IMG/VR virus record: IMGVR_UViG_3300028536_000014
Location: 62,001 to 126,000 of that record
Direction: 5' to 3' (one strand)
Length of the DNA: 64,000 nucleotides
Of this stretch, positions 4,560-56,230 are shown piece after piece. Positions within the stretch are counted from its first letter, which is position 1; each line of letters begins with the position of its first letter. A model generated the notes under the pieces. That model searched no databases. It was not told where the DNA came from and saw only the letters and a program-made list of their open reading frames with translations. A program made the translations under genes and the position numbers.

Positions 4560-4641
4560 TTTACCCCCAATATAAAAAGATTACAAAATTTATAGATCAC
4601 ATCCACAGACCTTTTATTGAGGTCTGTGGATGTGATCTGAA

Positions 4642-4908
4642 TTATAGAATAACTTTATGAGATTTCTGTAAAATGACATACCAATGATCTTCCGATAATT
4701 CATTGTTGACGTATGCCATATATAGAGAATTAGAACATTGTCCGCAAGATCCTCCACATAAAGAACAAACAACCTCATTACCTTTCCATTTATAATCATT
4801 ACGAAGATGTACTTCTAAATCAACACCACCGTATTTAACGATAGCGGGTTTAATCTTATTTTGTTGTAAAATTGACACATATTTATTCTGTATAACCGTT
4901 TGTGTCAA
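4642..4908 (-). CDS. Hypothetical protein, Cys cluster (CxxCxxxCxxC)
   Basis: 88-aa ORF on the coding strand. Confidence 0.45.
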   Translation of the reverse strand: MTQTVIQNKYVSILQQNKIKPAIVKYGGVDLEVHLRNDYKWKGNEVVCSLCGGSCGQCSNSLYMAYVNNELSEDHWYVILQKSHKVIL

Positions 4909-5146: not shown

Positions 5147-6358
5147 TTAGCGTTTGTTATTCGCTAAGAGCACGATACCTTTCGGTTCGTTCGCATTGTG
5201 ATAGGCTATCGCCGCTTCATCTCGGATGTTTATAGCAGCATTAACATCTCGATCATGGGTTTGATGACAGTGAGGACAGGTCCAAGTTCTTTCTGACAAC
5301 TTTAACTTACGATCAAGACGTTGTTGACAACTGCTACAAATATGACTTGAAGGGTAATAAGCATCCATAACGACTACAGAACAATGTCCAGATTCCTGGG
5401 CTTTATAGATCACGAAGGTCTTAAAGGTAGACCACGCTGCGTCTGAGATGTGTTTCGCTAATCGATAGTTTTTGACCATATTACTAGGCACAAGCGCTTC
5501 GAGTCCGATGACTTGGTTTTCGTCGACGAGGATTCGAGAGAGTTTGTGTAGATGGTCTTGACGTGCGTTAGCGATATGTTGGTGTATGGTAGAGACTTTA
5601 AGACAGGCTTTCTTGCGGTTATGGCTACCTTTGACTTTACGAGCTAAGGATTGTTGAGCCCGTTTAAGCTTTAAAGCGTATTTTTTAGTATGATGAGGGT
5701 TATCGATCTTGGTACCGTCTGAGAAAGTAAATAGAGACGTTAGACCTGCATCGATACCCGTAATTTTAGTACCTTTAGTAATATTAAATTCGTATTCACA
5801 AATAAAACAAACATAATACTTACCACTAGCTCTTTTAATTATAGTTAAAGAAGAAGGAGCTGATGGAAGTTCACGGTGCCATTCAATTTTAATAGGGTTA
5901 TCACATTTCGCTATGGTGAATTGACCATTTCTTATTTGAAAACCATCTCTCATTAAAGAGAATGTTTGTCGACCTTCTTTCTTTTTAAACCTAGGATACC
6001 CAATCCTCCGTCGGAAGAAATTAGAATAGGCTGTACCAAGATGTAACATCTCTTGCTGAAGGGCTGTAGCGATAGCTTCTTTTAACCATTCACAAATTGG
6101 GTCTGCTTTATAAATAGGAAGTCGTTTAACAAAATCATACCCGGTGGAGATAGGACGAGAAAGGTTAATAACCCCTTGTTCTTTTAAAGCTAGCCAGTTT
6201 TCATATTCTAGTTTAGCTTCTGATAATCCTCGATTAAAGACATATCGACAACATCCGAAGTTCTTAGCCAAGAATTCTTTCTGACTATCTGTAGGATATA
6301 TCCGAAAACAATAACCTTTTTTCATAATTGACGATATCCAATGTACTTCTACATACAA
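5147..6358 (-). mobile_element. tnpB: IS200/IS605-family RNA-guided endonuclease TnpB, no tnpA nearby
   Basis: N-terminal HTH (YCFRIYPT..Q...FGCCRYVFN), RuvC residues GIDAG, GLEAL and DRDVNAAINI, zinc finger CSSC...CPHC. Confidence 0.92.
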
Positions 6359-6532
6359 TATAGATACCAGTGAGATATAATTTTAGTGGTGCACTACGAT
6401 ACTCCGGAGTCCCATCCATATCGGTGGGTCGTCAGACGCACACGCGCAACGTCATGCTGTGTTTCCGTGTCTGACTAATGGAACTTCAGGTGATGTAAAA
6501 ACACTCATTATTGTATTCATTTGATTTTAGTC

Positions 6533-7135
6533 CTAAACATGTAGAATCGAATCCTCATTCTTTATAGACGTAATCGTATTAACACGTCTAAATTTTAGAC
6601 TGTAATGATTAAATCGACCATTAAGAATCATGTTGATTAAATCATAAATCCTATTATCATTACGATTAATAATATCGCCATTCTTATCAGTGATATCTTT
6701 TACATAAAAAGAATATCCATGAACTGTTGAATGACCATTATCAATACGAATACTACCACTCATCATCACGTGACAATTCAGTTTTAGATCTTCTTTGACA
6801 ATTTGGTTAAGTGTTCCAGATAGAGGTTCACCAACAGCTGTAAGCGTATTCTTATCGATAAGAATAGAACTGTAATTAGCATTCAAACTCAATCGCATAA
6901 ATTCAGATGAATTTTTCAATACGAATTTGAACTGTGGTAGATTCTCAGTTTGAAACCACAATATTTGATTATCGATTTTCATCGAGAACTGATAAAGTTG
7001 AATATCGGGATGAAGTCTATCAGTACGACTTACACTGCCGTCTTCAATAGCTTCATTTGTCAAAGTGATATCGAGAACATCTCGCATATCGTCAAACGGT
7101 AAAATGATCTTGTAGATTTTACTTTCGTCAGTCAT
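6533..7135 (-). CDS. Hypothetical protein
   Basis: 200-aa ORF. Confidence 0.55.
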   Translation of the reverse strand: MTDESKIYKIILPFDDMRDVLDITLTNEAIEDGSVSRTDRLHPDIQLYQFSMKIDNQILWFQTENLPQFKFVLKNSSEFMRLSLNANYSSILIDKNTLTAVGEPLSGTLNQIVKEDLKLNCHVMMSGSIRIDNGHSTVHGYSFYVKDITDKNGDIINRNDNRIYDLINMILNGRFNHYSLKFRRVNTITSIKNEDSILHV

Positions 7136-7654: not shown

Positions 7655-7865
7655 GTTGGGTCTCGCAAGTTTGATTCAAACCACGTCTATGACCCATTGG
7701 GTCCTTGGTATCATAAGGAACAGCAAAAGGACACCATGTACTTCCGTGATGAATCCCATTACAGTTGGTACAATACGGTGTCGAAGGAACGTAATCTTTT
7801 ACTTCTTCTGCCTTAAGCCAACGACCCATTGATATCCCCTGATTGAGTAAAAATAAATAAATCAA
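7617..7865 (-). CDS. Hypothetical Cys/His-containing protein
   Basis: CTNC...H...WC. Confidence 0.4.
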   Translation of the reverse strand: MIYLFLLNQGISMGRWLKAEEVKDYVPSTPYCTNCNGIHHGSTWCPFAVPYDTKDPMGHRRGLNQTCETQHVGNGKIRITTK

Positions 7866-7911
7866 TATGTTACATCAAAAAATAAACGGCTAAACAAAAA
7901 AAAATAAGGAA

Positions 7912-7939
7912 TGTGAGCAAGGAATTAACCTTGCTCACA
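7912..7939 (-). terminator. Intrinsic terminator
   Basis: 11-bp hairpin followed by a T tract on the minus strand. Confidence 0.6.
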
Positions 7940-7955
7940 GTTCCAAAATTTATTA

Positions 7956-8156
7956 TCAACGACGGATCAGTACTCCTCCAGCAGATCGGATATCACGGAC
8001 ACCTTTCCAAGTTGTATCCTTCTTGTTATTAGAACTGGGTGCAGATTGATCAGAAGCACGATTGGTATGCCCCTGACATTGACACGCTTGTGATTTGGGC
8101 TGAAGCACACCACAAGTGCACTCTTTTGGCCATCCAAAACAAGTTGTACAAAACAT
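7956..8156 (-). CDS. Hypothetical Cys-rich small protein
   Basis: 66-aa ORF preceded by AGGAG. Confidence 0.4.
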   Translation of the reverse strand: MFCTTCFGWPKECTCGVLQPKSQACQCQGHTNRASDQSAPSSNNKKDTTWKGVRDIRSAGGVLIRR

Positions 8157-11241: not shown

Positions 11242-11703
11242 TTATGCCGCTAAAGCGGCATCGATTGCATTGATGGCATATAACGTAAAATTAGTTATTT
11301 CTTTACCATCAGAACCCAATTGTGTTATTCCAGCCGTACGAAACTTAACCCTGTCTTTGAATGCATTGGGGTTTTGGTTGAATAGATTTTGTAAAACTAA
11401 CCCTTGTGGTGTTCTAAGAAGACGTATATCGGCAAATAAACTACCATCTTTAATGGTCAGTCTTTCTACGCGATGACTAACTTTGTCTTCAGGAACTTTA
11501 AGAGCGTCGTATGGATCTGGTAACGTTCTTAAATCAGGCATTCCAATTTGTCCAAATATCGGAAACTCACTATTCTTTAAAGTCCGAGACACAACGTCAG
11601 ATGAATAGATTCTGTCATTTTTATTGGGTTTATCCAACGTCATGACTTCGACATCATGTACGATAATGTCTCGTGTAATACAATCGCAATCTTCATCGTA
11701 CAT
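11242..11703 (-). CDS. T4 gp21-like prohead protease homologue with apparently substituted catalytic residues
   Basis: NKNDRIY...FGQIGMP...VSHRV..L..KDG.L.ADIRLL.TPQG..L...FRTAG, resembling NRNGR.Y/GELGHP/VSH/TP.G/SSRG. Confidence 0.55.
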   Translation of the reverse strand: MYDEDCDCITRDIIVHDVEVMTLDKPNKNDRIYSSDVVSRTLKNSEFPIFGQIGMPDLRTLPDPYDALKVPEDKVSHRVERLTIKDGSLFADIRLLRTPQGLVLQNLFNQNPNAFKDRVKFRTAGITQLGSDGKEITNFTLYAINAIDAALAA

Positions 11704-11994: not shown

Positions 11995-12216
11995 ATCGGA
12001 TTCCTTGGATGATGATAGTTAAGCTACTTCAAAAGCTTCGATATGCTTCGAAGAAATAGTCGCGATTAACGGAAAGAAATCAGGGTCCTTCCCTTCTTTG
12101 ATCCATTGTTTGTAAAACTTCTTTTTGAACCTATAGTTCTTCCATGGAACAGATAGATTGTAAAAGAACAAATTGACTTTCTTACGAAAGGTCATACATC
12201 ATCTTTTAATGTTAAG

Positions 12217-12290
12217 TGGTTGGAGGACTAGGACTCGAACCTAGATTAATGACGTCAAAGGACACCGTCCTACCATTAGACGATCCTCCA
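12217..12290 (-). tRNA. tRNA-Gln(UUG)
   Basis: U1-A72 acceptor TGGAGGA/TCCTCCA, anticodon loop CTTTGAC, CCA. Confidence 0.9.
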
Positions 12291-12566
12291 TCATAATCAC
12301 TTAATCATTAGAAAGAAAATAGGAACAGTTCCGGTTTCCAGGTAAAAACACAAACGTGTCATTTCATACTCCAATCAATAAACCCTTAGACGAGCACACG
12401 ATCACTACGCCTGGTATCACTGGTCCGAATGGGGTTGCAGGGGGGACCCATTCAGCTGAGGCGAAGTTTAACCAAATACCTTCATAATCCATAATTGTAA
12501 CAACGACATCATTAGAATTAGAAGGTTTTCATGAACGTGTGCTCCTCTAAAGATTCACATTAGAAG

Positions 12567-12643
12567 ACCCCTTTCATCATTAACGTCACTGGCACAATGA
12601 GAACTCGTCTCGGGCCAGCCGTCCTTATTTGACGAAAGGGGTC
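12567..12643 (-). repeat. Hairpin element, copy 2, carrying the 21-mer
   Basis: GACCCCTTTC/GAAAGGGGTC stem enclosing CTGGCCCGAGACGAGTTCTCA. Confidence 0.8.
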
Positions 12644-13268
12644 ATGCCACATGCAATATTGGTTTCAACTCCCTTTGAGCGCGATGCTCTCTGCAGAGTT
12701 CCACCATCGAAAGTGTACGAACACTCTCTCTTTCTGCTTTTTCAGCGTGCGGTTAATACACAAGTTAGGACTAGTTGGTTTTGAGTGCCGTAACACTCAC
12801 CTAGGTAGTCCTTGCTGGCTTATGCCAGTAGCCGCGTAACAAACAACACGGGTTTACAAATTATGACCCATATCGTTACGCGGCTATTCGGAGCCTAACG
12901 TCTTCATGTGAGGTATCTCCTCTTGTTGGCAGGTCAAAAGACTTCTCGTAAGAAGCCTGAACATGATGTCGGTGGCGAAAGGTAAGCGGTACCCTCGCAA
13001 CCTGTGACATCACACCTTTCTTACAACGTTTGCCCGAACGAGCTTATGGATTCTCCCCATCTGGCTCGGTGATCTTTCGATCTATTGCCGAAACAGTTCG
13101 GCATAACAACACGGCGGGCAGGTGCTCCTTAACGCCTTTCGGCATACCCTATCTCGAAAGATAGATCAGTCATTCAAGAACAAGAGCGGATCCTTGAATC
13201 AAGACGTAGTGATCGCCGATACCTCGGAGTATCGGTTTAGTTACCGTTAACGTCATACTACCATGCTA

Positions 13269-13360
13269 AGATCAGTGAAGGATGCTATTTCAAGGACGAC
13301 TCCACCGTAATTGGCATCACGGCTTCAAAGTCTCGCATCTATCCTACACATCAAAGATCC
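13269..13360 (-). rRNA. 23S rRNA L1-stalk (H76-H78)-like segment embedded in a phage ncRNA; not a complete rRNA
   Basis: TTGATGTGTAGGATAGATGCGAGACTTTGAAGCCGTGATGCCAATTACGGTGGAGTCGTCCTTGAAATAGCATC: 56 of 74 nt identical to the E. coli sequence as recalled, differences keep pairing. Confidence 0.85.
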
Positions 13361-14150
13361 GTTAAAGTTTCAACAGTACTAAACTAAACCGCGTGAAAGA
13401 AAACACGGGGCGTAACACCGCACCGAAAGAGGGTGAGTATGTTCGTATAGCCCCAGATCATGATCCGCATTCTGTTACCCCAGTCACGTAGGTTAGAGAA
13501 TAACACGAATCACGATTGTTTTCTTTTGTTTAGCGTTCCTGCTAACGATTGCATTGGGTTAGTCCCACGTCCACATTCTGGATGCTCATTTCCAGACTCA
13601 GTTTTCGATGGAGCTTTGGTAACATTCTTTTCGTTGACCTTACCATTTTGATAAGGCTAGAAGTAATAGCGACTTCAAAGAACATGTCTATTGATCAGTG
13701 TATCAAGCACAGACCGTTACGTTGGTCTGTGTTGAATCCCGCTCCAGTTTCCCGGCTACGGCTTCTCCCGTCGATGTTCACTTTTACGAAAAGAATTCAT
13801 TGCTTGGTATAAAGCTTGATGGTAATGGCTTCGCCAGTGTTTATACCACCTGCGCATGGACGATCTCTCCTCCACGACTCACCATTGTTACGAGGCATGC
13901 ATTTGCCCAACACCATTCTGCATTTACCAACCAATACATATATCTGACTTTTTTGATCAGATTAAACGATAATACAAGCACTCCATTAAGCACTCGCGTA
14001 GTGCTCAACAGGCTGCTTCCTCAGACGTAAATAGATCACAAGGTCTACATATCTGAATAGACAACTTGACTAGTCGTGGCCACAACCAATCCGTAGGGTT
14101 TGAATAGTTTCGAATGCCTTCGCTACTACCCCTTCGCAAATCACCCTTAG

Positions 14151-14211
14151 CTGTTATACTTATTTTAATGTTAAAATAAGTTTCGTCCCTTAAAGGACTC
14201 GTCAGTAACAG
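14151..14211 (-). ncRNA. Hammerhead ribozyme (type I)
   Basis: CTGTTA-CTGACGA-GTCC(TTTAAG)GGAC-GAA-ACTTATTTTAA(CA)TTAAAATAAGT-A-TAACAG; predicted cut after GUA, between 14157 and 14156. Confidence 0.9.
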
Positions 14212-14225
14212 TTTTATTCTACAAA

Positions 14226-14301
14226 TGGTGCCCCTGTCTGGTACCGAGCCAGATTCCCTGGCTTACAAAGCCAGACCTCATCCATTAAAGGCTTCAGGGG
14301 C
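14226..14301 (-). tRNA. tRNA-Thr(UGU), atypical T loop
   Basis: GCCCCTG/CAGGGGC acceptor, anticodon loop TTTGTAA, T loop CTCGGTA, CCA. Confidence 0.85.
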
Positions 14302-14308
14302 ATGTTTG

Positions 14309-14782
14309 TCAATTGACGATATTATTTCTCGTCTTGTATTCCTGAATAGCGGCGTTGATTTGATCGTCTGTCAGAAGAAGAACATCGACAATTGAAAAAT
14401 ACATGACGAGCGTTTCATCACCTGTGATTTCTCGTATTTCTTCAACGAAAATGCTATACTTGGCTGGTTCACCAGGAAACAAACCGACAATGATTTCGAG
14501 GCTCACGTTAGAATCATCACGAATCGTACCATCATCATTGGCTGGATACCAATCCAAGCGATACTCGGAGTCCTCATGACATCCAAGATCTTCTTTACCA
14601 TCGATGATCAGATCGAACTCATGTTCACCGAGTTCGACAGAACCAAGACCGTTCGGTTCAGAACTCAAAGCTTCGGTTATCTTGGCAACATATTGAGCGA
14701 AGCGAGCTTTCTCTCGAATGTTTTTCCGAGAATCTTTCTCTACTTCTTCTTCGTACTCTTCATCAAGTTCAGTCATGTTCAA
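14309..14782 (-). CDS. Hypothetical acidic protein
   Basis: 157-aa ORF. Confidence 0.55.
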   Translation of the reverse strand: MNMTELDEEYEEEVEKDSRKNIREKARFAQYVAKITEALSSEPNGLGSVELGEHEFDLIIDGKEDLGCHEDSEYRLDWYPANDDGTIRDDSNVSLEIIVGLFPGEPAKYSIFVEEIREITGDETLVMYFSIVDVLLLTDDQINAAIQEYKTRNNIVN

Positions 14783-14810
14783 CTCCTCTGTTGCGTGCTA
14801 TACCTCTGAG

Positions 14811-15008
14811 TTACTTCGGTTGTTTTGGTTTCAGTTCTTTGACAGAGCCAACAAGAGGTGCGCCGTATCGGCTCCGTAGCAACATCCCACCTAAACGCAA
14901 TCGCTGACCTGGAGTGGCGTTTTTGAATCTGTCAGATGCCATCAGAGTCTCCAAATTCTTCTTGAAGGTTGTGATTCCGCTGAAGGACATATCGTTTCCT
15001 TTTAACAC
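14811..15008 (-). CDS. Hypothetical basic small protein
   Basis: 65-aa ORF. Confidence 0.45.
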   Translation of the reverse strand: MLKGNDMSFSGITTFKKNLETLMASDRFKNATPGQRLRLGGMLLRSRYGAPLVGSVKELKPKQPK

Positions 15009-15012
15009 AAAA

Positions 15013-15062
15013 TGGTCCCCGGAGCCGGAATCGAACCGGCACGCCTTACAGCGAGGGATTTT
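15013..15062 (-). pseudogene. 3-prime half (exon 2) of a tRNA-Leu(UAA)-type gene; 5-prime half decayed
   Basis: AAAATCCCTC-variable arm-GCCGGTTCGATTCCGGC-TCCGGGG-A-CCA; upstream exon keeps only AGGGAACTT, with no matching acceptor strand or D arm. Confidence 0.75.
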
Positions 15063-15706
15063 CTTACCACTATAGCTTTCGCTACCATTAAGAAGTATTC
15101 AGCCTTCACTCTTATAGAGTTATTAACTCAGAGCTATTCCTTACTAACTTCTACATGTTTGTGGTCTGGACTGTACCTTAACCTTAGTTCCAACAGAACT
15201 TTTGATGACTCAGCTACACGGTTTCCCGGCTTTTTATCGAAGTTACTTCGCTAGTCAAAGAAATGCTAATTACTAGAATTAGATCATCGCAATGAAAACT
15301 TTAGGTTGTTGCCTACCAGTCTCTACACGTTTTCTTCTCAAGAACAGTCTGTGGAGATCTAATGTTCTATCCCGGTATCATTACTCCCCAACCATTTCTG
15401 GTCACCGGCTCACATCTACCATACGGTAGCTATTGAAGAATTTCGCTCGGTATTAGCATATGAACTGCAACAGACAACTCACTTAGCTTTCACCGACTTT
15501 GACAACATTCACCCTAGCCCTTACCCCGTTGATATTATCTCTGGACGATGATATCTCTATCACCTATTTATAATGGATGCTAGTTTATACGTCTTTCGAT
15601 TGAGTTGTTTCATGAGGGTAGTGAGAGCTTCAACTCACATAAGCTTTTATTCTTCCAACTCTGTTTTACCAACTCATTTTTCGTAGGTGCTCAAATTAAA
15701 GTACTT
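15063..15706 (-). ncRNA. Group I intron, ORF-less (644 nt), in the tRNA-Leu anticodon
   Basis: P1 CTT|AAG with TTTGAG (U.G at the splice site); core motifs AAAGTCGGTGAAAGCT, GCTAATACCGAG, GTAGAGACTG, AAGGTACAGTCC; terminal G. Confidence 0.88.
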
Positions 15707-15738
15707 AAGTTCCCTTTTCTACAAACTACCAACAACAT

Positions 15739-15824
15739 TGGTGCCCAGGGGGGGACTCGAACCCCCAAAAACCACGGGTTTTAAGCCCGCAAAATGTGCC
15801 ATTCTTTATTAGGTTCACCCAGGC
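15739..15824 (-). tRNA. tRNA with UAA anticodon (Leu), enlarged D region and no long variable arm
   Basis: GCCTGGG/CCTGGGC acceptor, GCGGG-CTTAAAA-CCCGT, GGGGG-TTCGAGT-CCCCC, A-CCA. Confidence 0.75.
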
Positions 15825-15833
15825 TAATACAAA

Positions 15834-16697
15834 TCAGAGATAACTGTATTCTAAATCAGCTATCTTTGCAAAACCTTTTCTTCTTACTTGGTGATTAACA
15901 GCATCGTAACTATGACCGGTTTCTTTGATAGCTTCAGTTAAAGAATTATATATCGTTACTAACTTCCTCACGATATCTTTAACACAAACTATTTTGCGAT
16001 ACCCACCAGTTCTATGACCGTTAACAATATTTCCTTCACCAAGCTGTGTCATTTTCTTAAGATCAAGAATTGGCCACGGATTTCCATCAGCATATTTAAA
16101 CGCGTGATAATCAACGTGATAACCAAAGTTAAGACCTTTTCTTAAACATTTAGAAACTGTTGCTGGATGAACTTCAAATCTTTCGGAGAATTCTCTCAAC
16201 GAATACATAAGAAATTCTCTTGGTTCTAAACCAAGATATTTAACTGCGATAGGTTTGTTATCGCTCATAAATCCAGACAATCGTGCATGTTCTACATTCT
16301 CTTTTCCAGTACACCATTCAAGGTTATCTGGAAGATTATGTAGTTGATTTCCATCACAATGATTAACTTCTAAATTACTAAAAGATTTATCTAGATGTCT
16401 AGATGGTCGACCAATGAAAGTTTTTGCTATCAATCGACTAAATTTATGACATACAGGTTTTTTGCCAGGGCTTGTTATAATTACACCTACCGTACCATTA
16501 CCAGAAAGTTGTGGTTTTAACAAGTTACCTGTATGTATGTTTACTATTTTTCCATCTCGACTAACACCAAGTCTTTTGTCATCAGGAAAGTAAAAGAAGT
16601 TATCGAAACCGAGTACCGGTTCAGGATGAACTTCTTCCAAATCAGAAGGATCATTCATCCTTACTACGGCACTCATATCAAGACTCCTGTTGTTCAA
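15834..16697 (-). CDS. Free-standing HNH homing endonuclease (NUMOD4/HNH type)
   Basis: VSRDGKI...LKPQ...RLIAKTFI...VNHCDGNQLHNLPDNLEWCT.KEN..HA. Confidence 0.88.
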   Translation of the reverse strand: MNNRSLDMSAVVRMNDPSDLEEVHPEPVLGFDNFFYFPDDKRLGVSRDGKIVNIHTGNLLKPQLSGNGTVGVIITSPGKKPVCHKFSRLIAKTFIGRPSRHLDKSFSNLEVNHCDGNQLHNLPDNLEWCTGKENVEHARLSGFMSDNKPIAVKYLGLEPREFLMYSLREFSERFEVHPATVSKCLRKGLNFGYHVDYHAFKYADGNPWPILDLKKMTQLGEGNIVNGHRTGGYRKIVCVKDIVRKLVTIYNSLTEAIKETGHSYDAVNHQVRRKGFAKIADLEYSYL

Positions 16698-20406: not shown

Positions 20407-20463
20407 AACGTTATAGATCCTCTCACATACTCCTATTGATGGAGTATGTGAGAGGATATTCCT

Positions 20464-20790
20464 TTATCGATTATTCGGCTTCTGGGTGGAACCCTGTCGA
20501 CGAGGAGTAGGTTCTGGAGTTTTCTCTGGAAGAGGTTTTGCGTACTTGACATATCCAACGATTTTTCCATTGATATCGAAATCCATGACATCTTTGATAC
20601 CAACTCCATCAGCATCTGTTTCGATTTCGACAAGAACGTTGGTTCCAGAGCGACCTACAAAAATGGTATCATTGACTTTGGCAATGATTTCAACAGCAAA
20701 TGCGGTATCAGCCAGAACATTCAACTTCTCTGCTGGGATTTTGATCTTTGACAACTTACCTGTTAACTTAGCCATGATTTTTTTTCTCAA
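20464..20790 (-). CDS. Hypothetical protein, paralogue of 16751-17080
   Basis: Shared pattern with 16751-17080. Confidence 0.55.
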   Translation of the reverse strand: MRKKIMAKLTGKLSKIKIPAEKLNVLADTAFAVEIIAKVNDTIFVGRSGTNVLVEIETDADGVGIKDVMDFDINGKIVGYVKYAKPLPEKTPEPTPRRQGSTQKPNNR

Positions 20791-50492: not shown

Positions 50493-50832
50493 CCTTACCT
50501 TCAAGTAGAATCGTTACTTCTACTCCGTGTTGATACACAGCTCTAACTTTCATTAGAAGAGGAGAACATATCACGATCTCTTTCGAGACCCCTTCCATTT
50601 CAGCTCACTTGAGCCTACTCCGCGCTACCGGATGTTCGTTGAACGTTTTTCTGACGGATCAGAAACTTCGCTGCGGATTATCCAATCTTCTTATTTGTTA
50701 CCATACCTGAGTGATTAGTTCAGCCATTGTTATATCACTATAACAACTTGGTATAAGAAGCTCTAAAGGACTTTCCCGACAATTAGAAAGGTGCTATTCA
50801 GATATCACTATCTGAAAGGACTAAAACTGTTA
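50493..50832 (-). ncRNA. Group I intron, ORF-less (340 nt), in the RNAP catalytic motif
   Basis: P1 GAT|TAA with TTAGTC; AATTGTCGGGAAA, AATCCGCAGC, GTTCAACGAACAT/ATGTTC (P7); terminal G. Confidence 0.92.
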
Positions 50833-52071
50833 ATCAGCGTTCATGCTCGTTGTGATCAAAATACTGACTCCAAATGTCAGATCCTTCGGATCGTTTTTAA
50901 CTCTTGGAATATAAACCTTCTGAATGGAACCTTGAAGCAAAGATGGAAATCGATTAAACAAGACTGGATAACGCCCATCTTTAGTATCAGAGATAATTTC
51001 TTTCAGATATTGATCAAGCAGTGGATGATAAATTTCAGTATGAGATAGAAGAAGTCCCACAGCGTCATTAATCAACATTCCACTTTTCTTGATAAGCTTG
51101 TTAATGAGCATCGGTCTGAAAATCGTTAAACCAACACCCCAAGGTATTTCAATTTCATCATATCGATGTGCGTCTGTTATCGAAGAGATAACAGCTCGTG
51201 CGGAATAATCGAATCGAGATCCACCGATATAATGTCGAAAGAGTCCAGACTTCTTAGCAACGATCGTCTTGAAATAACTGTCATAAAACTTACAGCTAAG
51301 AAGATACATCGCTCTAGCTGTACGATTTTCTTTAACAGAAACTGTTTGATTATGAAAATCTTTATCGATCGATACCAACATTTCGATAGCTTCAAGTGCT
51401 AACGGAACGGTACTGTCGATATAAGTGGCCAGAGATGTTTTCTCGATAACCAAGAGAGACTTATTCAGTAAAGGAATATAATCCGAGAACAAAATATCTT
51501 TCTTAACTGTTAAAAGATCAGCAAGATAATCTCGTCCTATTCCTTTGATTTTAAAATCTTTCAGACTCATCAAGAATTCGATGATCGATTGAAAATTCTG
51601 AACGAAGTAATTATATCCACGTTGAATACCAGCTTGTTCAATTTTATCTACGACATCAGGACGATTGATCTGAGGTGAATATGTTGTATCAGTTAACCAT
51701 CTCAAGATGCTAAATTTTGATTTGCTAAATCGATAATCCAACATAATCCAGATTATTGGTGACATCAATTTCTCAACACCAATAGGTTTTCGAAACCAAA
51801 CCAACGGTTCAATGGTGTTTTCAATCGCTGCACTGACGAGTGTGTCGCAGTGTTCACAAATCGTATTCTTACTGAATTCTCCTTTTGTCATTCCACATCG
51901 ACACGAAGGAAGAATTGTCACCATGTCACTTGAATAAGTTGTGGTGATTAATTGTTCAATACGTTCACGATCTTTCGTGGTAGTGTTAAGCAAGTCGTTT
52001 ATGATAATCGGAGGGTTCTTGAGCCCCTCGAACATCATATTGTTATCGATCAAACTCTGGATAATAGGCAC
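50833..52071 (-). CDS. Exon 1 of the non-virion RNA polymerase beta-prime-like subunit (phiKZ gp55-like); spliced product 473 aa
   Basis: Zinc finger CRCG...CEHC, K.GLFR..I.GSR.DYSARAVIS, FNRFPSL, ends SMNAD. Confidence 0.9.
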
Positions 52072-54367: not shown

Positions 54368-56230
54368 TTACCAACGAGCCTGGAAATAAGCTGATGCCGC
54401 AGCCGGTGTTGAACCATAACCACCCTGACGCATGTAGCTCTGACCAGTACCCAGCAATGCCTGCTGAGCATAAGTTGCCACACCACGTGCGTTGTAGAAG
54501 TCGTTGCCAGACATCGGTGTCCGGATATTGACCTGTAGGTTCTGAGTAGCGATAGCCGCGTCAAGCGCCGATAAGAAAGCACCAGTAAAAGTCACACGCT
54601 GATAGTAGCCCGTAAACTTCGCGGTATCGTTAGAAAGTTGCATAAGCATCTTCCGACGCGCTTCCAGTCGCAGATTCTCCGGATATTCCAAACGCAGGAA
54701 GGTATCAGACCATTCACGAATCATGGCCGGATTGCGTTGTCCGACGATATTCGCTACAGCAGCGTAGTCGAAATCACGCAGGTCACGCTTGTTGCCCTGG
54801 TTGTCTACCCAAGTACCAGCATGGATACGTTCCGATTGTGTTGCGAACAACGGAGTACCCATTTGGAAATGCTTGGCGTACTCACCATTGGTCAGTTCAT
54901 TGGCAGACTGGATGATGCGCTTGTAAGCACCATCGACGCCACGGGCCGCAGCCATGAAGACACTGAGATAATGGGTCTGCGGACCATACTCTGGAATATC
55001 CATCGAAATCATGAGATCGCTATTGAACAGAGCGGCAATATACATGCCGAGCTGTTCTGATTTGAAATCGTCAGACTTGGTGTCGATTGGCAAACCAAAC
55101 CCGCTTGTGTTGGTTGCCAGAATACCGCTAGGTTGCGGTACTGGCAAATTGCCTTCGTAGTTGTAGGCGCCAGGATCTGTGATGTCAAGCTCCTTCTTGG
55201 AGACAGCCATCGGACGAAACGCTTGGATCCAGTTTGACGATGGACGTAGTGCCAGTGCCGTCGAGAGTGCCAGCAGAACCGATGCTGTTGTTTGAGCAAC
55301 GTTGGCGGTAATGTCGGTGATCACTTGACGAGCGACAAATTTCCGAGTTTGAGCCATCTGCTGAGGCGCAAATGCCTGACCAAGTCCGCCGTTCGGATCT
55401 TGTGCAGGAAACCAGACCGCATCCACGAAACTGGAAAGAGTGGAGAAGTTCGCATTACGATCGCCAGTGTTCATCTGACGACTATCGCGATCTACGACCT
55501 TACGATCGGAGAAATTGATAAGCACGTCACTACGATAGACATTGCCAGCTGCATCTTCGAGTGTCTGACGAGCAAATGTCACATCGACCTGAGCCTGACC
55601 ACGCTTGTTCAGATTGGCGAGGTTGAGATCTTTGAAACCAGGTGTCCGAGAATTGAGTTCGGTAACACCAGCCATTGCAGCAGTCAGAGCCAGACGATGA
55701 ACCTGGGTCTTGTTAACTGGATTGAAGTTGCTATTGACGACTGTGCCGTCAACGAAGAGCACCTTGTTTGTGTTGTAAGCGGTCTCGATAATCCGCCGAG
55801 CTTTGCGAACCAGAATGTCGTTGATCGCATCGGACGGAACGCGATAGATCATTACGGTACGATCGTAGATCTGGTCCGAATACGGTTGGATTTCTTCACC
55901 GGTTTCGGCGAGAAGGATGATGTAAACAGCGACACCCAGTTCCGGCATGTTCTGCAATCGCGTGGCCACGAGAATGCAAGAGAAGTCGAGCGCTGGATCG
56001 GTTGCCCGACTCAATTCGACCACACCGATATCGACACTGCGGTCAGCGAGCTTGTAAATCTCGATCAGAGCCGTCTTGACACTATTGTAATACTCCGAAC
56101 CCATTCCACGCGGAATCGGGGCATTGAAGAGACCACCGTCATGCATGTTCCAACCGTTCTGACCTGCGGATGCGGCTGCTGCACGCGGATCACCATTGCT
56201 TGCACCACTACCTTCGTTAACAATACTCAC
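54368..56230 (-). CDS. chmA: Chimallin, phage nuclear shell protein
   Basis: 620 aa; GN..RSD, VITD, IDTKSDDF..EQLG, GTW.D..G.KRDLRDFD, TG..QRVTF...F..ALD resemble recalled 201phi2-1 gp105; sits upstream of the gp55-like RNAP subunit as in phiKZ. Confidence 0.88.
   Translation of the reverse strand: MSIVNEGSGASNGDPRAAAASAGQNGWNMHDGGLFNAPIPRGMGSEYYNSVKTALIEIYKLADRSVDIGVVELSRATDPALDFSCILVATRLQNMPELGVAVYIILLAETGEEIQPYSDQIYDRTVMIYRVPSDAINDILVRKARRIIETAYNTNKVLFVDGTVVNSNFNPVNKTQVHRLALTAAMAGVTELNSRTPGFKDLNLANLNKRGQAQVDVTFARQTLEDAAGNVYRSDVLINFSDRKVVDRDSRQMNTGDRNANFSTLSSFVDAVWFPAQDPNGGLGQAFAPQQMAQTRKFVARQVITDITANVAQTTASVLLALSTALALRPSSNWIQAFRPMAVSKKELDITDPGAYNYEGNLPVPQPSGILATNTSGFGLPIDTKSDDFKSEQLGMYIAALFNSDLMISMDIPEYGPQTHYLSVFMAAARGVDGAYKRIIQSANELTNGEYAKHFQMGTPLFATQSERIHAGTWVDNQGNKRDLRDFDYAAVANIVGQRNPAMIREWSDTFLRLEYPENLRLEARRKMLMQLSNDTAKFTGYYQRVTFTGAFLSALDAAIATQNLQVNIRTPMSGNDFYNARGVATYAQQALLGTGQSYMRQGGYGSTPAAASAYFQARW

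What the first reader, a model, noticed from the sequence alone, without database searches (positions are those of the whole stretch)
14151..14211. Hammerhead ribozyme placed to cut out the 5-prime end of the rRNA-like RNA
Complete core on the minus strand: stem I CTGTTA/TAACAG, CUGACGA, stem II GTCC/GGAC, GAAA, 10-bp stem III, GUA triplet. It lies 15 nt past the CCA of tRNA-Thr. Cleavage would release the large RNA starting at 14156 with a 5-prime OH, which is known to slow RNase E attack. Inference: host-independent maturation of the large RNA from a polycistronic tRNA transcript.
Basis: partly seen in the sequence, partly recalled or inferred. Interest (0 to 1): 0.78.

Follow-up and report, generated by a model that had tools for sequence, protein, structure and literature searches.

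The report
Hammerhead ribozyme before a phage RNA
A complete self-cleaving hammerhead ribozyme sits on the minus strand of a nucleus-forming jumbo phage, between an odd tRNA-like gene and 1.9 kb of structured non-coding RNA, placed so that its cut would make the 5' end of that RNA; the ribozyme is a known phage kind and only its setting is unusual.

Summary
Minus strand 14211..14151 carries a full type I hammerhead. It has a 6-bp open stem I, core CUGACGA, a 5-bp stem II, GAAA, a 10-11-bp stem III and a GUA triplet. The predicted cut lies between 14157 and 14156.

It is not a chance motif. None of 300 shuffled windows gave a motif this good. A covariance model built from 23 other phage type I hammerheads, with this one left out, scores it 39.8 bits (E 6e-10) in the correct register. 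It stays below Rfam's gathering scores.

The ribozyme lies 14 nt after an atypical tRNA-Thr-like gene. Downstream are 1866 ORF-free, structured bases holding a 23S L1-stalk mimic, ending at tRNA-Gln.

In other phage contigs the same hammerhead design cuts 16-47 nt before a ribosome-binding site, or exactly at +1 of tRNA-Tyr. The reading "it makes the 5'-OH end of the downstream RNA" therefore fits the geometry and the analogues.

Not shown:
- cleavage itself;
- co-transcription with the tRNA;
- that the 1.9 kb is one RNA;
- any RNase E effect.

The only other jumbo phage found with a related L1-mimic RNA has no hammerhead. Verdict: a new member of a known kind in an interesting context.

The parts
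14151..14211 (-). Type I hammerhead ribozyme. Stem I 14211-14206 / 14156-14151; core CUGACGA 14205-14199; stem II with loop 14198-14185; GAAA 14184-14181; stem III 14181-14158; A17 at 14157. Predicted cut between 14157 and 14156.
   Evidence: Sequence. MFE fold. Only descriptor hit in the window, and 0 of 300 shuffles as good. CM R2, built without it, gives 39.8 bits, E 6.4e-10. Rfam below threshold: RAGATH-1-hammerhead 34.8 bits (cutoff 56.3), Hammerhead_1 23.4 bits (cutoff 34).
14212..14225 (-). 14-nt A-rich spacer (UUUGUAGAAUAAAA) between the CCA and stem I. Its AUAAAA aligns to the conserved linker of the RAGATH-1 hammerhead model.
   Evidence: cmscan alignment.
14226..14301 (-). tRNA-Thr(UGU)-like gene with encoded CCA. 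Atypical: T-loop CUCGGUA and A8.
   Evidence: ARAGORN. Cloverleaf is the MFE fold. No Rfam tRNA match at E<=10.
12291..14156 (-). 1866-nt ORF-free stretch that would be the 3' cleavage product, if it is one RNA. GC is higher than in neighbouring genes, and it is structured on the minus strand.
   Evidence: No ORF on the minus strand except a 55-codon TTG frame. About 35 stops per frame and no long frame under any stop reassignment. Fold z-scores on the minus strand of -2.4 to -5.2 at 12500-13100 and 13700-14300. No Rfam family matches apart from the L1 piece.
13270..13359 (-). Mimic of the 23S rRNA L1 stalk (helices 76-78) inside the non-coding stretch.
   Evidence: LSU_rRNA_bacteria positions 2126-2215, 63.6 bits. 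It is the only part resembling 23S. Related mimics occur in L050, L054 and L059, with 9 of 19 pairs showing compensatory changes.
12217..12290 (-). tRNA-Gln(UUG). Its 5' end (an RNase P site, by inference) would set the 3' end of the non-coding stretch.
   Evidence: ARAGORN; Rfam tRNA 59 bits.
14309..14782 (-). Upstream 157-aa orphan ORF on the same strand. It shows that the region is read on the minus strand.
   Evidence: No homologue other than itself among 5.8 billion proteins. No Pfam family.

Best explanation
This is an active type I hammerhead inside a minus-strand transcript of a chimallin-encoding jumbo phage.

Proposed sequence of events:
1. The polymerase passes the tRNA-Thr-like gene.
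2. The 61-nt ribozyme folds locally and cuts itself after A14157.
3. The ribozyme stays on the upstream piece (tRNA-like, 14-nt spacer, 55 nt of ribozyme) and ends in a 2',3'-cyclic phosphate.
4. The downstream non-coding RNA starts at U14156 with a 5'-hydroxyl and carries only six ribozyme nucleotides.
5. The 3' end of that RNA is most simply set by RNase P cutting at tRNA-Gln (12290).

The job of the ribozyme is therefore to give the downstream structured RNA, which carries an L1-stalk mimic, a precise, protein-independent 5' end and to uncouple it from the upstream tRNA and mRNA.

Shown: the motif, its fold, its family membership, the strand, the non-coding and structured nature of what follows, and the way the same ribozyme design is used in other phages.

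Inferred: cleavage itself, co-transcription, a single 1.87-kb product, and any stabilising effect of the 5'-OH.
For: - All core positions and three helices are present. The fold is the MFE both alone and in context.
- Chance is excluded.
- A model built from 23 other phage type I hammerheads has 98.5% of cells paired and 12 of 15 pairs with double changes. It scores this one 39.8 bits, E 6.4e-10, full length, as the only hit in the window.
- All neighbouring genes and tRNAs lie on the same strand.
- The downstream 1866 nt are non-coding under any code and structured on the minus strand.
- Same design elsewhere: the cut falls exactly at +1 of tRNA-Tyr at six unique junctions in five distinct phage contigs, L011, L012 (L015 is an identical copy), L013 twice, L027 and L041. 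In most others it falls 16-47 nt before a Shine-Dalgarno site plus ATG. This matches the published view that phage hammerheads cut polycistronic RNAs into units (PMC3088659).
- The first nucleotides of the product are predicted to pair with the last 40 nt before tRNA-Gln (summed probability about 0.45). This is weak evidence.
Against: - There is no experimental or transcript evidence.
- There is no sequence variation: three assemblies are identical, so no covariation can be read at this locus itself.
- Scores are below both Rfam gathering cutoffs.
- Stem I is short and open, and no loop-loop tertiary contact could be identified, so the rate at cellular Mg2+ is unknown.
- The related L1-mimic RNA in L050 has no hammerhead. 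In L059 the mimic is a stand-alone RNA of about 230 nt.
- Two terminator-like hairpins lie inside the stretch (13997-13974 and 13408-13389), so the product may be shorter than 1.87 kb.
- The phage's own promoters are unknown.
Confidence: 0.6

Rival explanations
1. The ribozyme is active but releases a shorter RNA. This would be the 5' domain of roughly 14156 to 13400. The L1-mimic part would be made or processed separately, so the hammerhead would not be the 5' end of the 'rRNA-like' RNA.
For: - A terminator-like hairpin with a U-rich tail lies at 13408-13389, just before the mimic, and another at 13997-13974.
- A predicted helix, 14146-14141 with 13436-13431 (P 0.67), closes a separate 5' domain.
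- In L059 the mimic is a small stand-alone RNA between a promoter-like site and a terminator hairpin.
- L050 shares only about 230 nt around the mimic with the window.
Against: - The terminator-like sites are weak consensus hits: 11 found against 6.4 expected.
- Nucleus-forming phages use their own RNA polymerases, whose signals are unknown.
- No promoter-like site stands out before the mimic.
- The MFE also pairs the extreme 5' end with the extreme 3' end.
Confidence: 0.2
2. The ribozyme serves the upstream tRNA-like gene by detaching it from the rest of the transcript. This would be 3'-side processing, like the HDV-like theta ribozymes of gut phages.
For: - It lies only 14 nt after an encoded CCA.
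- Ribozyme-assisted tRNA 3' processing exists in phages (PMC10879173).
Against: - The cut is 69 nt past the CCA.
- It leaves a folded ribozyme ending in a cyclic phosphate on the tRNA, which still needs an endonuclease.
- Theta ribozymes cut at their own 5' edge, right at the tRNA end.
- In the tRNA arrays found here the same hammerhead design serves the downstream tRNA, not the upstream one.
Confidence: 0.08
3. The ribozyme is conditional: a switch that sets how much downstream RNA is freed, rather than a constitutive processing site.
For: - UAAGGG just after stem I (14149-14144) can pair with CCUUUA of stem II and its loop (by eye). That pairing would compete with the active fold.
- Slower or regulated phage hammerheads have been proposed (PMC3088659).
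Against: - The active fold is the MFE and carries 45% of the ensemble for the 71-nt piece. It also persists in the 302-nt context.
- The alternative pairing is only 6 bp with a G-U pair.
- No ligand-binding element is apparent.
Confidence: 0.1
4. The motif is an inactive relic or a look-alike with no present function.
For: - Scores fall below Rfam gathering cutoffs.
- The motif is very A/U-rich (29% GC), with a short open stem I.
- No relatives of the phage are available to show conservation.
Against: - No core position is mutated and all three stems are perfect.
- 0 of 300 shuffles were as good.
- The independent model gives E 6.4e-10.
- Orientation and placement match the working examples.
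Confidence: 0.07

Closest known systems
Type I hammerheads of phages and prophages that cut polycistronic transcripts (Perreault et al. 2011, PMC3088659; Rfam RF00163)
   Same: - Same core, same open-stem-I topology and same size range.
- Same stem II (GUCC...GGAC) as 40 other IMG/VR loci.
- Same placement just upstream of a functional unit.
- The custom family model scores it 39.8 bits.
   Different: - Here the downstream unit is about 1.9 kb of non-coding RNA rather than an mRNA or a tRNA.
- Stem III is unusually long and A/U-rich.
- The triplet is GUA (3 of 24 in the set).
- The Rfam RF00163 score is below its cutoff, because that model expects a short stem III and mis-registers the alignment.
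- The host is a chimallin-encoding jumbo phage. I found no report of a hammerhead in such phages.
RAGATH-1 hammerhead (Rfam RF03152)
   Same: - Best Rfam match: 34.8 bits, E 1.6e-4 in the local search.
- Shared A-rich linker before stem I, U-rich 5-bp stem I, and long stem III.
   Different: - Below the cutoff of 56.3 bits.
- The upstream hairpin of the model is missing (2 nt where the model has 11).
- Stem II here is a normal 5-bp helix, whereas the model has a minimal one.
Hammerhead fused to tRNA-Tyr in phage tRNA arrays
   Same: - Same ribozyme design inside a run of phage tRNA genes on the same strand.
- The ribozyme makes the 5' end of the next RNA.
- In L013 the second hammerhead follows the CCA of the preceding tRNA after an A-rich spacer of about 20 nt, as here.
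   Different: - There the cut is exactly at +1 of a tRNA, and stem I borrows the acceptor strand.
- Here no tRNA starts at 14156.
- I found no paper on this arrangement.
HDV-like theta ribozymes next to phage tRNAs (Kienbeck et al. 2024, PMC10879173)
   Same: A small self-cleaving ribozyme next to a phage tRNA gene, proposed to replace host RNases.
   Different: - A different ribozyme class.
- Theta ribozymes cut at the tRNA 3' end, whereas this one cuts 69 nt further on and serves the downstream RNA.
Large ornate phage-associated RNAs near tRNA genes (GOLLD, ROOL; from my own knowledge)
   Same: A long, structured, non-coding RNA of a phage lying among tRNA genes.
   Different: - No Rfam match to GOLLD, ROOL or any other family except the L1-stalk piece.
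- As far as I know, those RNAs are not described as having a hammerhead at the 5' end.

Membership tests
Hammerhead ribozyme, type I | Core C3 U4 G5 A6 N7 G8 A9 ... G12 A13 A14, with the A15.1-U16.1 pair | tested here: met
   CUGACGA at 14205-14199, GAAA at 14184-14181, U16.1 at 14158.
Hammerhead ribozyme, type I | Cleavage triplet N-U-H followed by stem I | tested here: met
   G14159 U14158 A14157, then UAACAG. GUA also occurs in 2 of the 23 comparison hammerheads.
Hammerhead ribozyme, type I | Three helices around the core, with stems II and III closed by loops and stem I open | tested here: met
   The MFE and centroid folds show exactly this, also in the 302-nt context.
Hammerhead ribozyme, type I | Score at or above the Rfam RF00163 gathering cutoff (34 bits) | tested here: not met
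   23.4 bits. The alignment is mis-registered in stem III.
Hammerhead ribozyme, type I | Match to a covariance model of natural phage type I hammerheads built without this sequence | tested here: met
   Model R2 from 23 sequences gives 39.8 bits, E 6.4e-10, model positions 1-54 of 54, at 14210..14152.
Hammerhead ribozyme, type I | Tertiary contact between loop II and stem I or its flanks, needed for fast cleavage at low Mg2+ | tested here: inconclusive
   No convincing complementarity found by eye. The A-rich 5' flank matches the conserved RAGATH-1 linker.
Hammerhead ribozyme, type I | Site-specific self-cleavage giving a 2',3'-cyclic phosphate and a 5'-OH | not testable with these tools
   Needs in vitro transcription or end-specific RNA sequencing.
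RAGATH-1 hammerhead (RF03152) | Score at or above the gathering cutoff (56.3 bits) | tested here: not met
   34.8 bits.
RAGATH-1 hammerhead (RF03152) | Hairpin upstream of the A-rich linker | tested here: not met
   Only 2 nt align where the model has an 11-nt hairpin insert.
Ribozyme-assisted tRNA 3' processing (theta ribozymes) | Cleavage site abuts the tRNA 3' end | tested here: not met
   The cut lies 69 nt after the CCA. No HDV-like match in the window.
Hammerhead-tRNA 5' fusion (seen in L011, L012, L013, L027, L041) | Cleavage exactly at +1 of a downstream tRNA | tested here: not met
   ARAGORN and Rfam find no tRNA starting at 14156.
GOLLD / ROOL large phage RNAs (for the downstream RNA) | Match to the Rfam family model | tested here: not met
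   No hit at E<=10 over 12000-16000 or at E<=1 over the window.

The most novel reading that the evidence does not exclude
In a nucleus-forming jumbo phage, transcription happens in a compartment thought to exclude most host proteins. There, a hammerhead would supply host-RNase-independent maturation of a large structured RNA that mimics the ribosomal L1 stalk. The RNA would get a 5'-OH end that then closes a terminal helix with its own 3' end. The same ribozyme class replaces RNase P at the 5' end of tRNA-Tyr in other phages. Self-cleaving ribozymes would then be a general phage device for making non-coding RNA ends without host enzymes.
Probability: 0.2. Interest if true: 0.75.

Novelty: new member of a known kind. 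Interest (0 to 1): 0.45.

Why it matters
The ribozyme gives a sharp, testable prediction for the 5' end (U14156, 5'-OH) of an otherwise uncharacterised 1.9-kb phage RNA that carries an L1-stalk mimic. That makes the RNA easy to map and to express with native ends.

It also adds a non-coding RNA to the list of things that phage hammerheads release. Together with the hammerhead-tRNA-Tyr fusions noticed here, it suggests that phages use this ribozyme to make exact RNA 5' ends without RNase P or RNase E.

If the phage nucleus really shuts out host RNases, that would explain why such a device is useful in this phage.

Tried and rejected
1. Relatives of the phage, wanted for covariation at the locus itself. 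Both neighbouring ORFs have no homologue other than themselves. The phage database has no DNA match. The other assemblies are 100% identical.

2. A MAFFT alignment of the hammerheads was out of register in the 3' half. I seeded a covariance model from seven alignable sequences instead and iterated.

3. The narrow first model R1 scored the window only 17 bits, in the wrong register, because it expects a short GC-rich stem III. This is the same failure as Rfam RF00163.

4. Other ribozymes or a second hammerhead that could make a circle or cut the 3' end: none found.

5. A hidden gene downstream under another genetic code: none.

6. rRNA likeness beyond the L1 stalk: none.

7. The L1-mimic pattern in 185,579 genome representatives gave only six chance hits in coding sequence.

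8. Cultured Stenotrophomonas phages of the Mendera type share the tRNA-Tyr but have no hammerhead.

9. Pairing of the product's 5' end with its 3' end is predicted. A 5-bp match within 40-60 nt is not beyond chance, so it carries little weight.

10. Literature searches for hammerheads in jumbo phages, hammerhead-tRNA-Tyr, and phage L1 mimics found nothing relevant.

Full report
**What is there**

On the minus strand, 14211..14151 reads as follows:
- CUGUUA (stem I, 5' strand)
- CUGACGA (core)
- GUCCU-UUAA-GGGAC (stem II and loop)
- GAAA
- a hairpin of 10-11 pairs (stem III, mostly A-U)
- GUA
- UAACAG (stem I, 3' strand)

Every position that defines a hammerhead is present:
- C3 to A9
- G12 to A14
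- the A15.1-U16.1 and C15.2-G16.2 pairs
- a non-G at position 17
- a U-A pair at 1.1-2.1

The spacer to the CCA of the preceding tRNA-like gene is 14 nt.

**Is it more than chance**

- The 71-nt piece folds into exactly this three-way junction as its minimum-free-energy and centroid structure (z -4.2).
- The junction persists next to the cloverleaf when 302 nt are folded.
- A descriptor scan of both strands of the window finds this one type I hammerhead and no other.
- Among 300 dinucleotide-preserving shuffles of the window, 5 gave any loose match and none gave stems this long.

Rfam places it below threshold in two families:

| Family | Score (bits) | Cutoff (bits) |
|---|---|---|
| RAGATH-1 hammerhead | 34.8 | 56.3 |
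| Hammerhead_1 | 23.4 | 34 |

In the Hammerhead_1 alignment stem III is visibly mis-registered, because that model expects a very short stem III.

**An independent family test**

I scanned IMG/VR for the core plus this stem II (CTGANGAGTCC-N6-GGACGAAAC). This pattern says nothing about stems I and III. It gave 41 loci.

Most of them fold as open-stem-I hammerheads of 47-71 nt. I seeded a covariance model from seven alignable ones, collected 23 natural phage hammerheads with it while leaving the window out, and rebuilt the model.

In that alignment:
- 98.5% of cells are standard pairs;
- 12 of 15 pairs show changes on both sides;
- the covariation score is 0.686, against 0.19 for shuffles and below 0.1 for slid partners.

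The alignment is fitted to the model, which inflates these numbers somewhat.

The rebuilt model scores the window's motif 39.8 bits, E 6.4e-10, over the full model length and in the correct register. It is the only hit in the window and in four related loci. I take the motif as a genuine member of the phage type I hammerhead class.

**Context**

The window equals IMG/VR contig UViG_3300028536_000014 (244.7 kb). It encodes a nuclear-shell protein (chimallin: phrog_4795, E 2.5e-79). The nearest cultured relative is only 33% identical (Burkholderia phage FLC9). So this is a distant nucleus-forming jumbo phage.

Around the ribozyme everything is on the minus strand, in this order:
1. tRNA-Leu (15816-15740)
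2. a below-threshold group I intron match (15571-15151)
3. two small ORFs
4. the tRNA-Thr-like gene (14301-14226)
5. the hammerhead
6. 1866 nt without a credible ORF
7. tRNA-Gln (12290-12217)
8. further ORFs

The tRNA-Thr-like gene folds as a cloverleaf and is called by ARAGORN. It is not matched by the Rfam tRNA model at all. It is atypical.

The 1866 nt have about 35 stops in each frame and no long frame under any stop reassignment. GC is higher than in the surrounding genes. Fold z-scores are clearly negative on the minus strand (-2.4 to -5.2 over 12500-13100 and 13700-14300).

Only 13359-13270 resembles rRNA: the L1 stalk, helices 76-78 (63.6 bits). Nothing else in the stretch resembles 23S or any Rfam family.

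**How the same ribozyme design is used elsewhere**

This gives the best functional clue.
- At six unique junctions in five distinct phage contigs, the hammerhead sits inside a large tRNA array. These are L011, L012 (L015 is an identical copy), L013 twice, L027 and L041.
- At each of these the predicted cut falls exactly before nucleotide +1 of tRNA-Tyr(GUA). The 3' strand of stem I is the first five nucleotides of the acceptor stem.
- In most other loci the ribozyme ends 16-47 nt before an ATG preceded by GGAGG-like sites. Contig L006 has six or seven of these in 5 kb.

This fits the published proposal that phage hammerheads cut long transcripts into units. It also fits the halovirus case, where a mapped transcript 5' end lies at the cleavage site (PMC3088659).

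A type I hammerhead cuts at its own 3' edge. The downstream RNA keeps six extra nucleotides at most, and the ribozyme stays on the upstream fragment. Theta ribozymes, which trim phage tRNA 3' ends, have the opposite geometry (PMC10879173).

The placement here therefore argues for "make the 5' end of what follows", not for "trim the tRNA".

- Nothing shows cleavage, co-transcription or stabilisation. The RNase E point is general knowledge: RNase E prefers 5'-monophosphate ends.
- The stretch may not be a single RNA. Two weak terminator-like hairpins lie inside it. A predicted helix, 14146-14141 with 13436-13431 (P 0.67), closes off a 5' domain just before the L1 mimic.
- The extreme 5' end is predicted to pair with the last 40 nt before tRNA-Gln (summed probability about 0.45). 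A 5-bp match is not beyond chance.
- The ribozyme is not a fixed partner of the L1-mimic RNA.

On that last point, scans with L1-mimic patterns found three other variants:
- **L045/L050**, a 190.9-kb phage contig. It aligns to the window over about 230 nt, E 1.9e-8.
- **L054**, a 1.6-kb fragment.
- **L059**, a 1-kb fragment in which the mimic is a stand-alone RNA of about 230 nt between promoter-like and terminator sites.

The mimic fold is kept, with compensatory changes at 9 of 19 pairs. It is absent from 185,579 genome representatives.

L050 has an Hfq gene just upstream (PF17209, 53 bits) and tRNA-like structures downstream. It has no hammerhead and no upstream tRNA.

**Verdict**

The ribozyme is a new member of a known kind.

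The most likely role (confidence about 0.6) is constitutive self-cleavage that creates the 5'-OH end of the downstream non-coding RNA within a mixed tRNA/mRNA transcript. RNase P at tRNA-Gln would probably set the other end.

The geometry and the analogues agree with it. The size and unity of the product, the stabilisation effect and host independence remain hypotheses.

The setting is what raises interest above that of an ordinary phage hammerhead: a nucleus-forming phage, and an L1-stalk-mimic RNA.

Noticed in passing
L011:8394-8525, L012:6872-7007 (= L015), L013:6478-6756 (two units), L027:1981-2120 (-), L041:4240-4377 (-): In phage tRNA arrays a type I hammerhead is fused to tRNA-Tyr(GUA). 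The predicted cut falls exactly before nucleotide +1 of the tRNA, and the 3' strand of stem I is the first 5 nt of the acceptor stem. This would give a tRNA 5' end without RNase P (5'-OH instead of 5'-phosphate). I found no paper on it. Cultured Mendera-type Stenotrophomonas phages share the tRNA-Tyr but lack the ribozyme.
   Followed up: partly
window 13270-13359 (-); L050:7214-7303; L054:~262-362; L059:~712-812: A family of 23S L1-stalk mimics sharing a non-rRNA variant (CGUCCUUGA.AUAGCA). They occur in two unrelated jumbo-phage contigs and two short metagenome fragments, with 9 of 19 pairs compensatory. None occurs in 185,579 genome representatives. In L059 the mimic is a stand-alone RNA of about 230 nt.
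   Followed up: partly
L050:5983-6195 (+), 7835-7960 (+): The other jumbo phage encodes an Hfq (PF17209, 53 bits) immediately upstream of its L1-mimic non-coding region. Just downstream lie a tRNA-like sequence and a T-arm/acceptor minihelix ending in CCA, neither called by ARAGORN.
   Followed up: partly
window 14226-14301 (-): The 'tRNA-Thr(UGU)' has a perfect cloverleaf and an encoded CCA. However, its T-loop is CUCGGUA (C54, G58), position 8 is A and position 14 is U. It gets no Rfam tRNA match even at E<=10.
   Followed up: partly
window 15014-15571 (-): There is a below-threshold group I intron match at 15571-15151 (43.3 bits, cutoff 50). About 90 nt further on is a tRNA-like 3' piece: a T arm plus UCCGGGG-A-CCA at 15060-15014. 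No matching 5' acceptor strand lies nearby. It may be a minihelix or a broken tRNA.
   Followed up: partly
window 50541-50852 (-): A group I intron above the Rfam cutoff (59.5 bits) overlaps the 3' end of ORF 50830-52071.
   Followed up: no
window 5147-7135 (-) and 11242-11703 (-): A 200-aa ORF matches only positions 272-448 of a 746-position major head protein profile. A 153-aa ORF matches only positions 46-132 of 519 of a head maturation protease profile. A TnpB-type transposase (phrog_506, E 2.5e-111) lies next to the capsid fragment. The capsid genes may be split or interrupted.
   Followed up: no
window 54368-56230 (-): A chimallin (phage nuclear shell protein, phrog_4795, E 2.5e-79). The nearest cultured relative is only 33% identical (Burkholderia phage FLC9), so this is a deep-branching nucleus-forming phage.
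   Followed up: partly
L006:8690-13234 (-): Six or seven type I hammerheads lie within about 4.5 kb of one 66.6-kb phage contig. Each ends 16-36 nt before a start codon, and most of these are preceded by a GGAGG-like site. This is a dense example of one ribozyme per gene.
   Followed up: partly
window 4587-4643 and 20408-20470: Both sites give weak microRNA-precursor matches on both strands, so they are long near-perfect hairpins or palindromes. The first lies close to the transposase gene.
   Followed up: no
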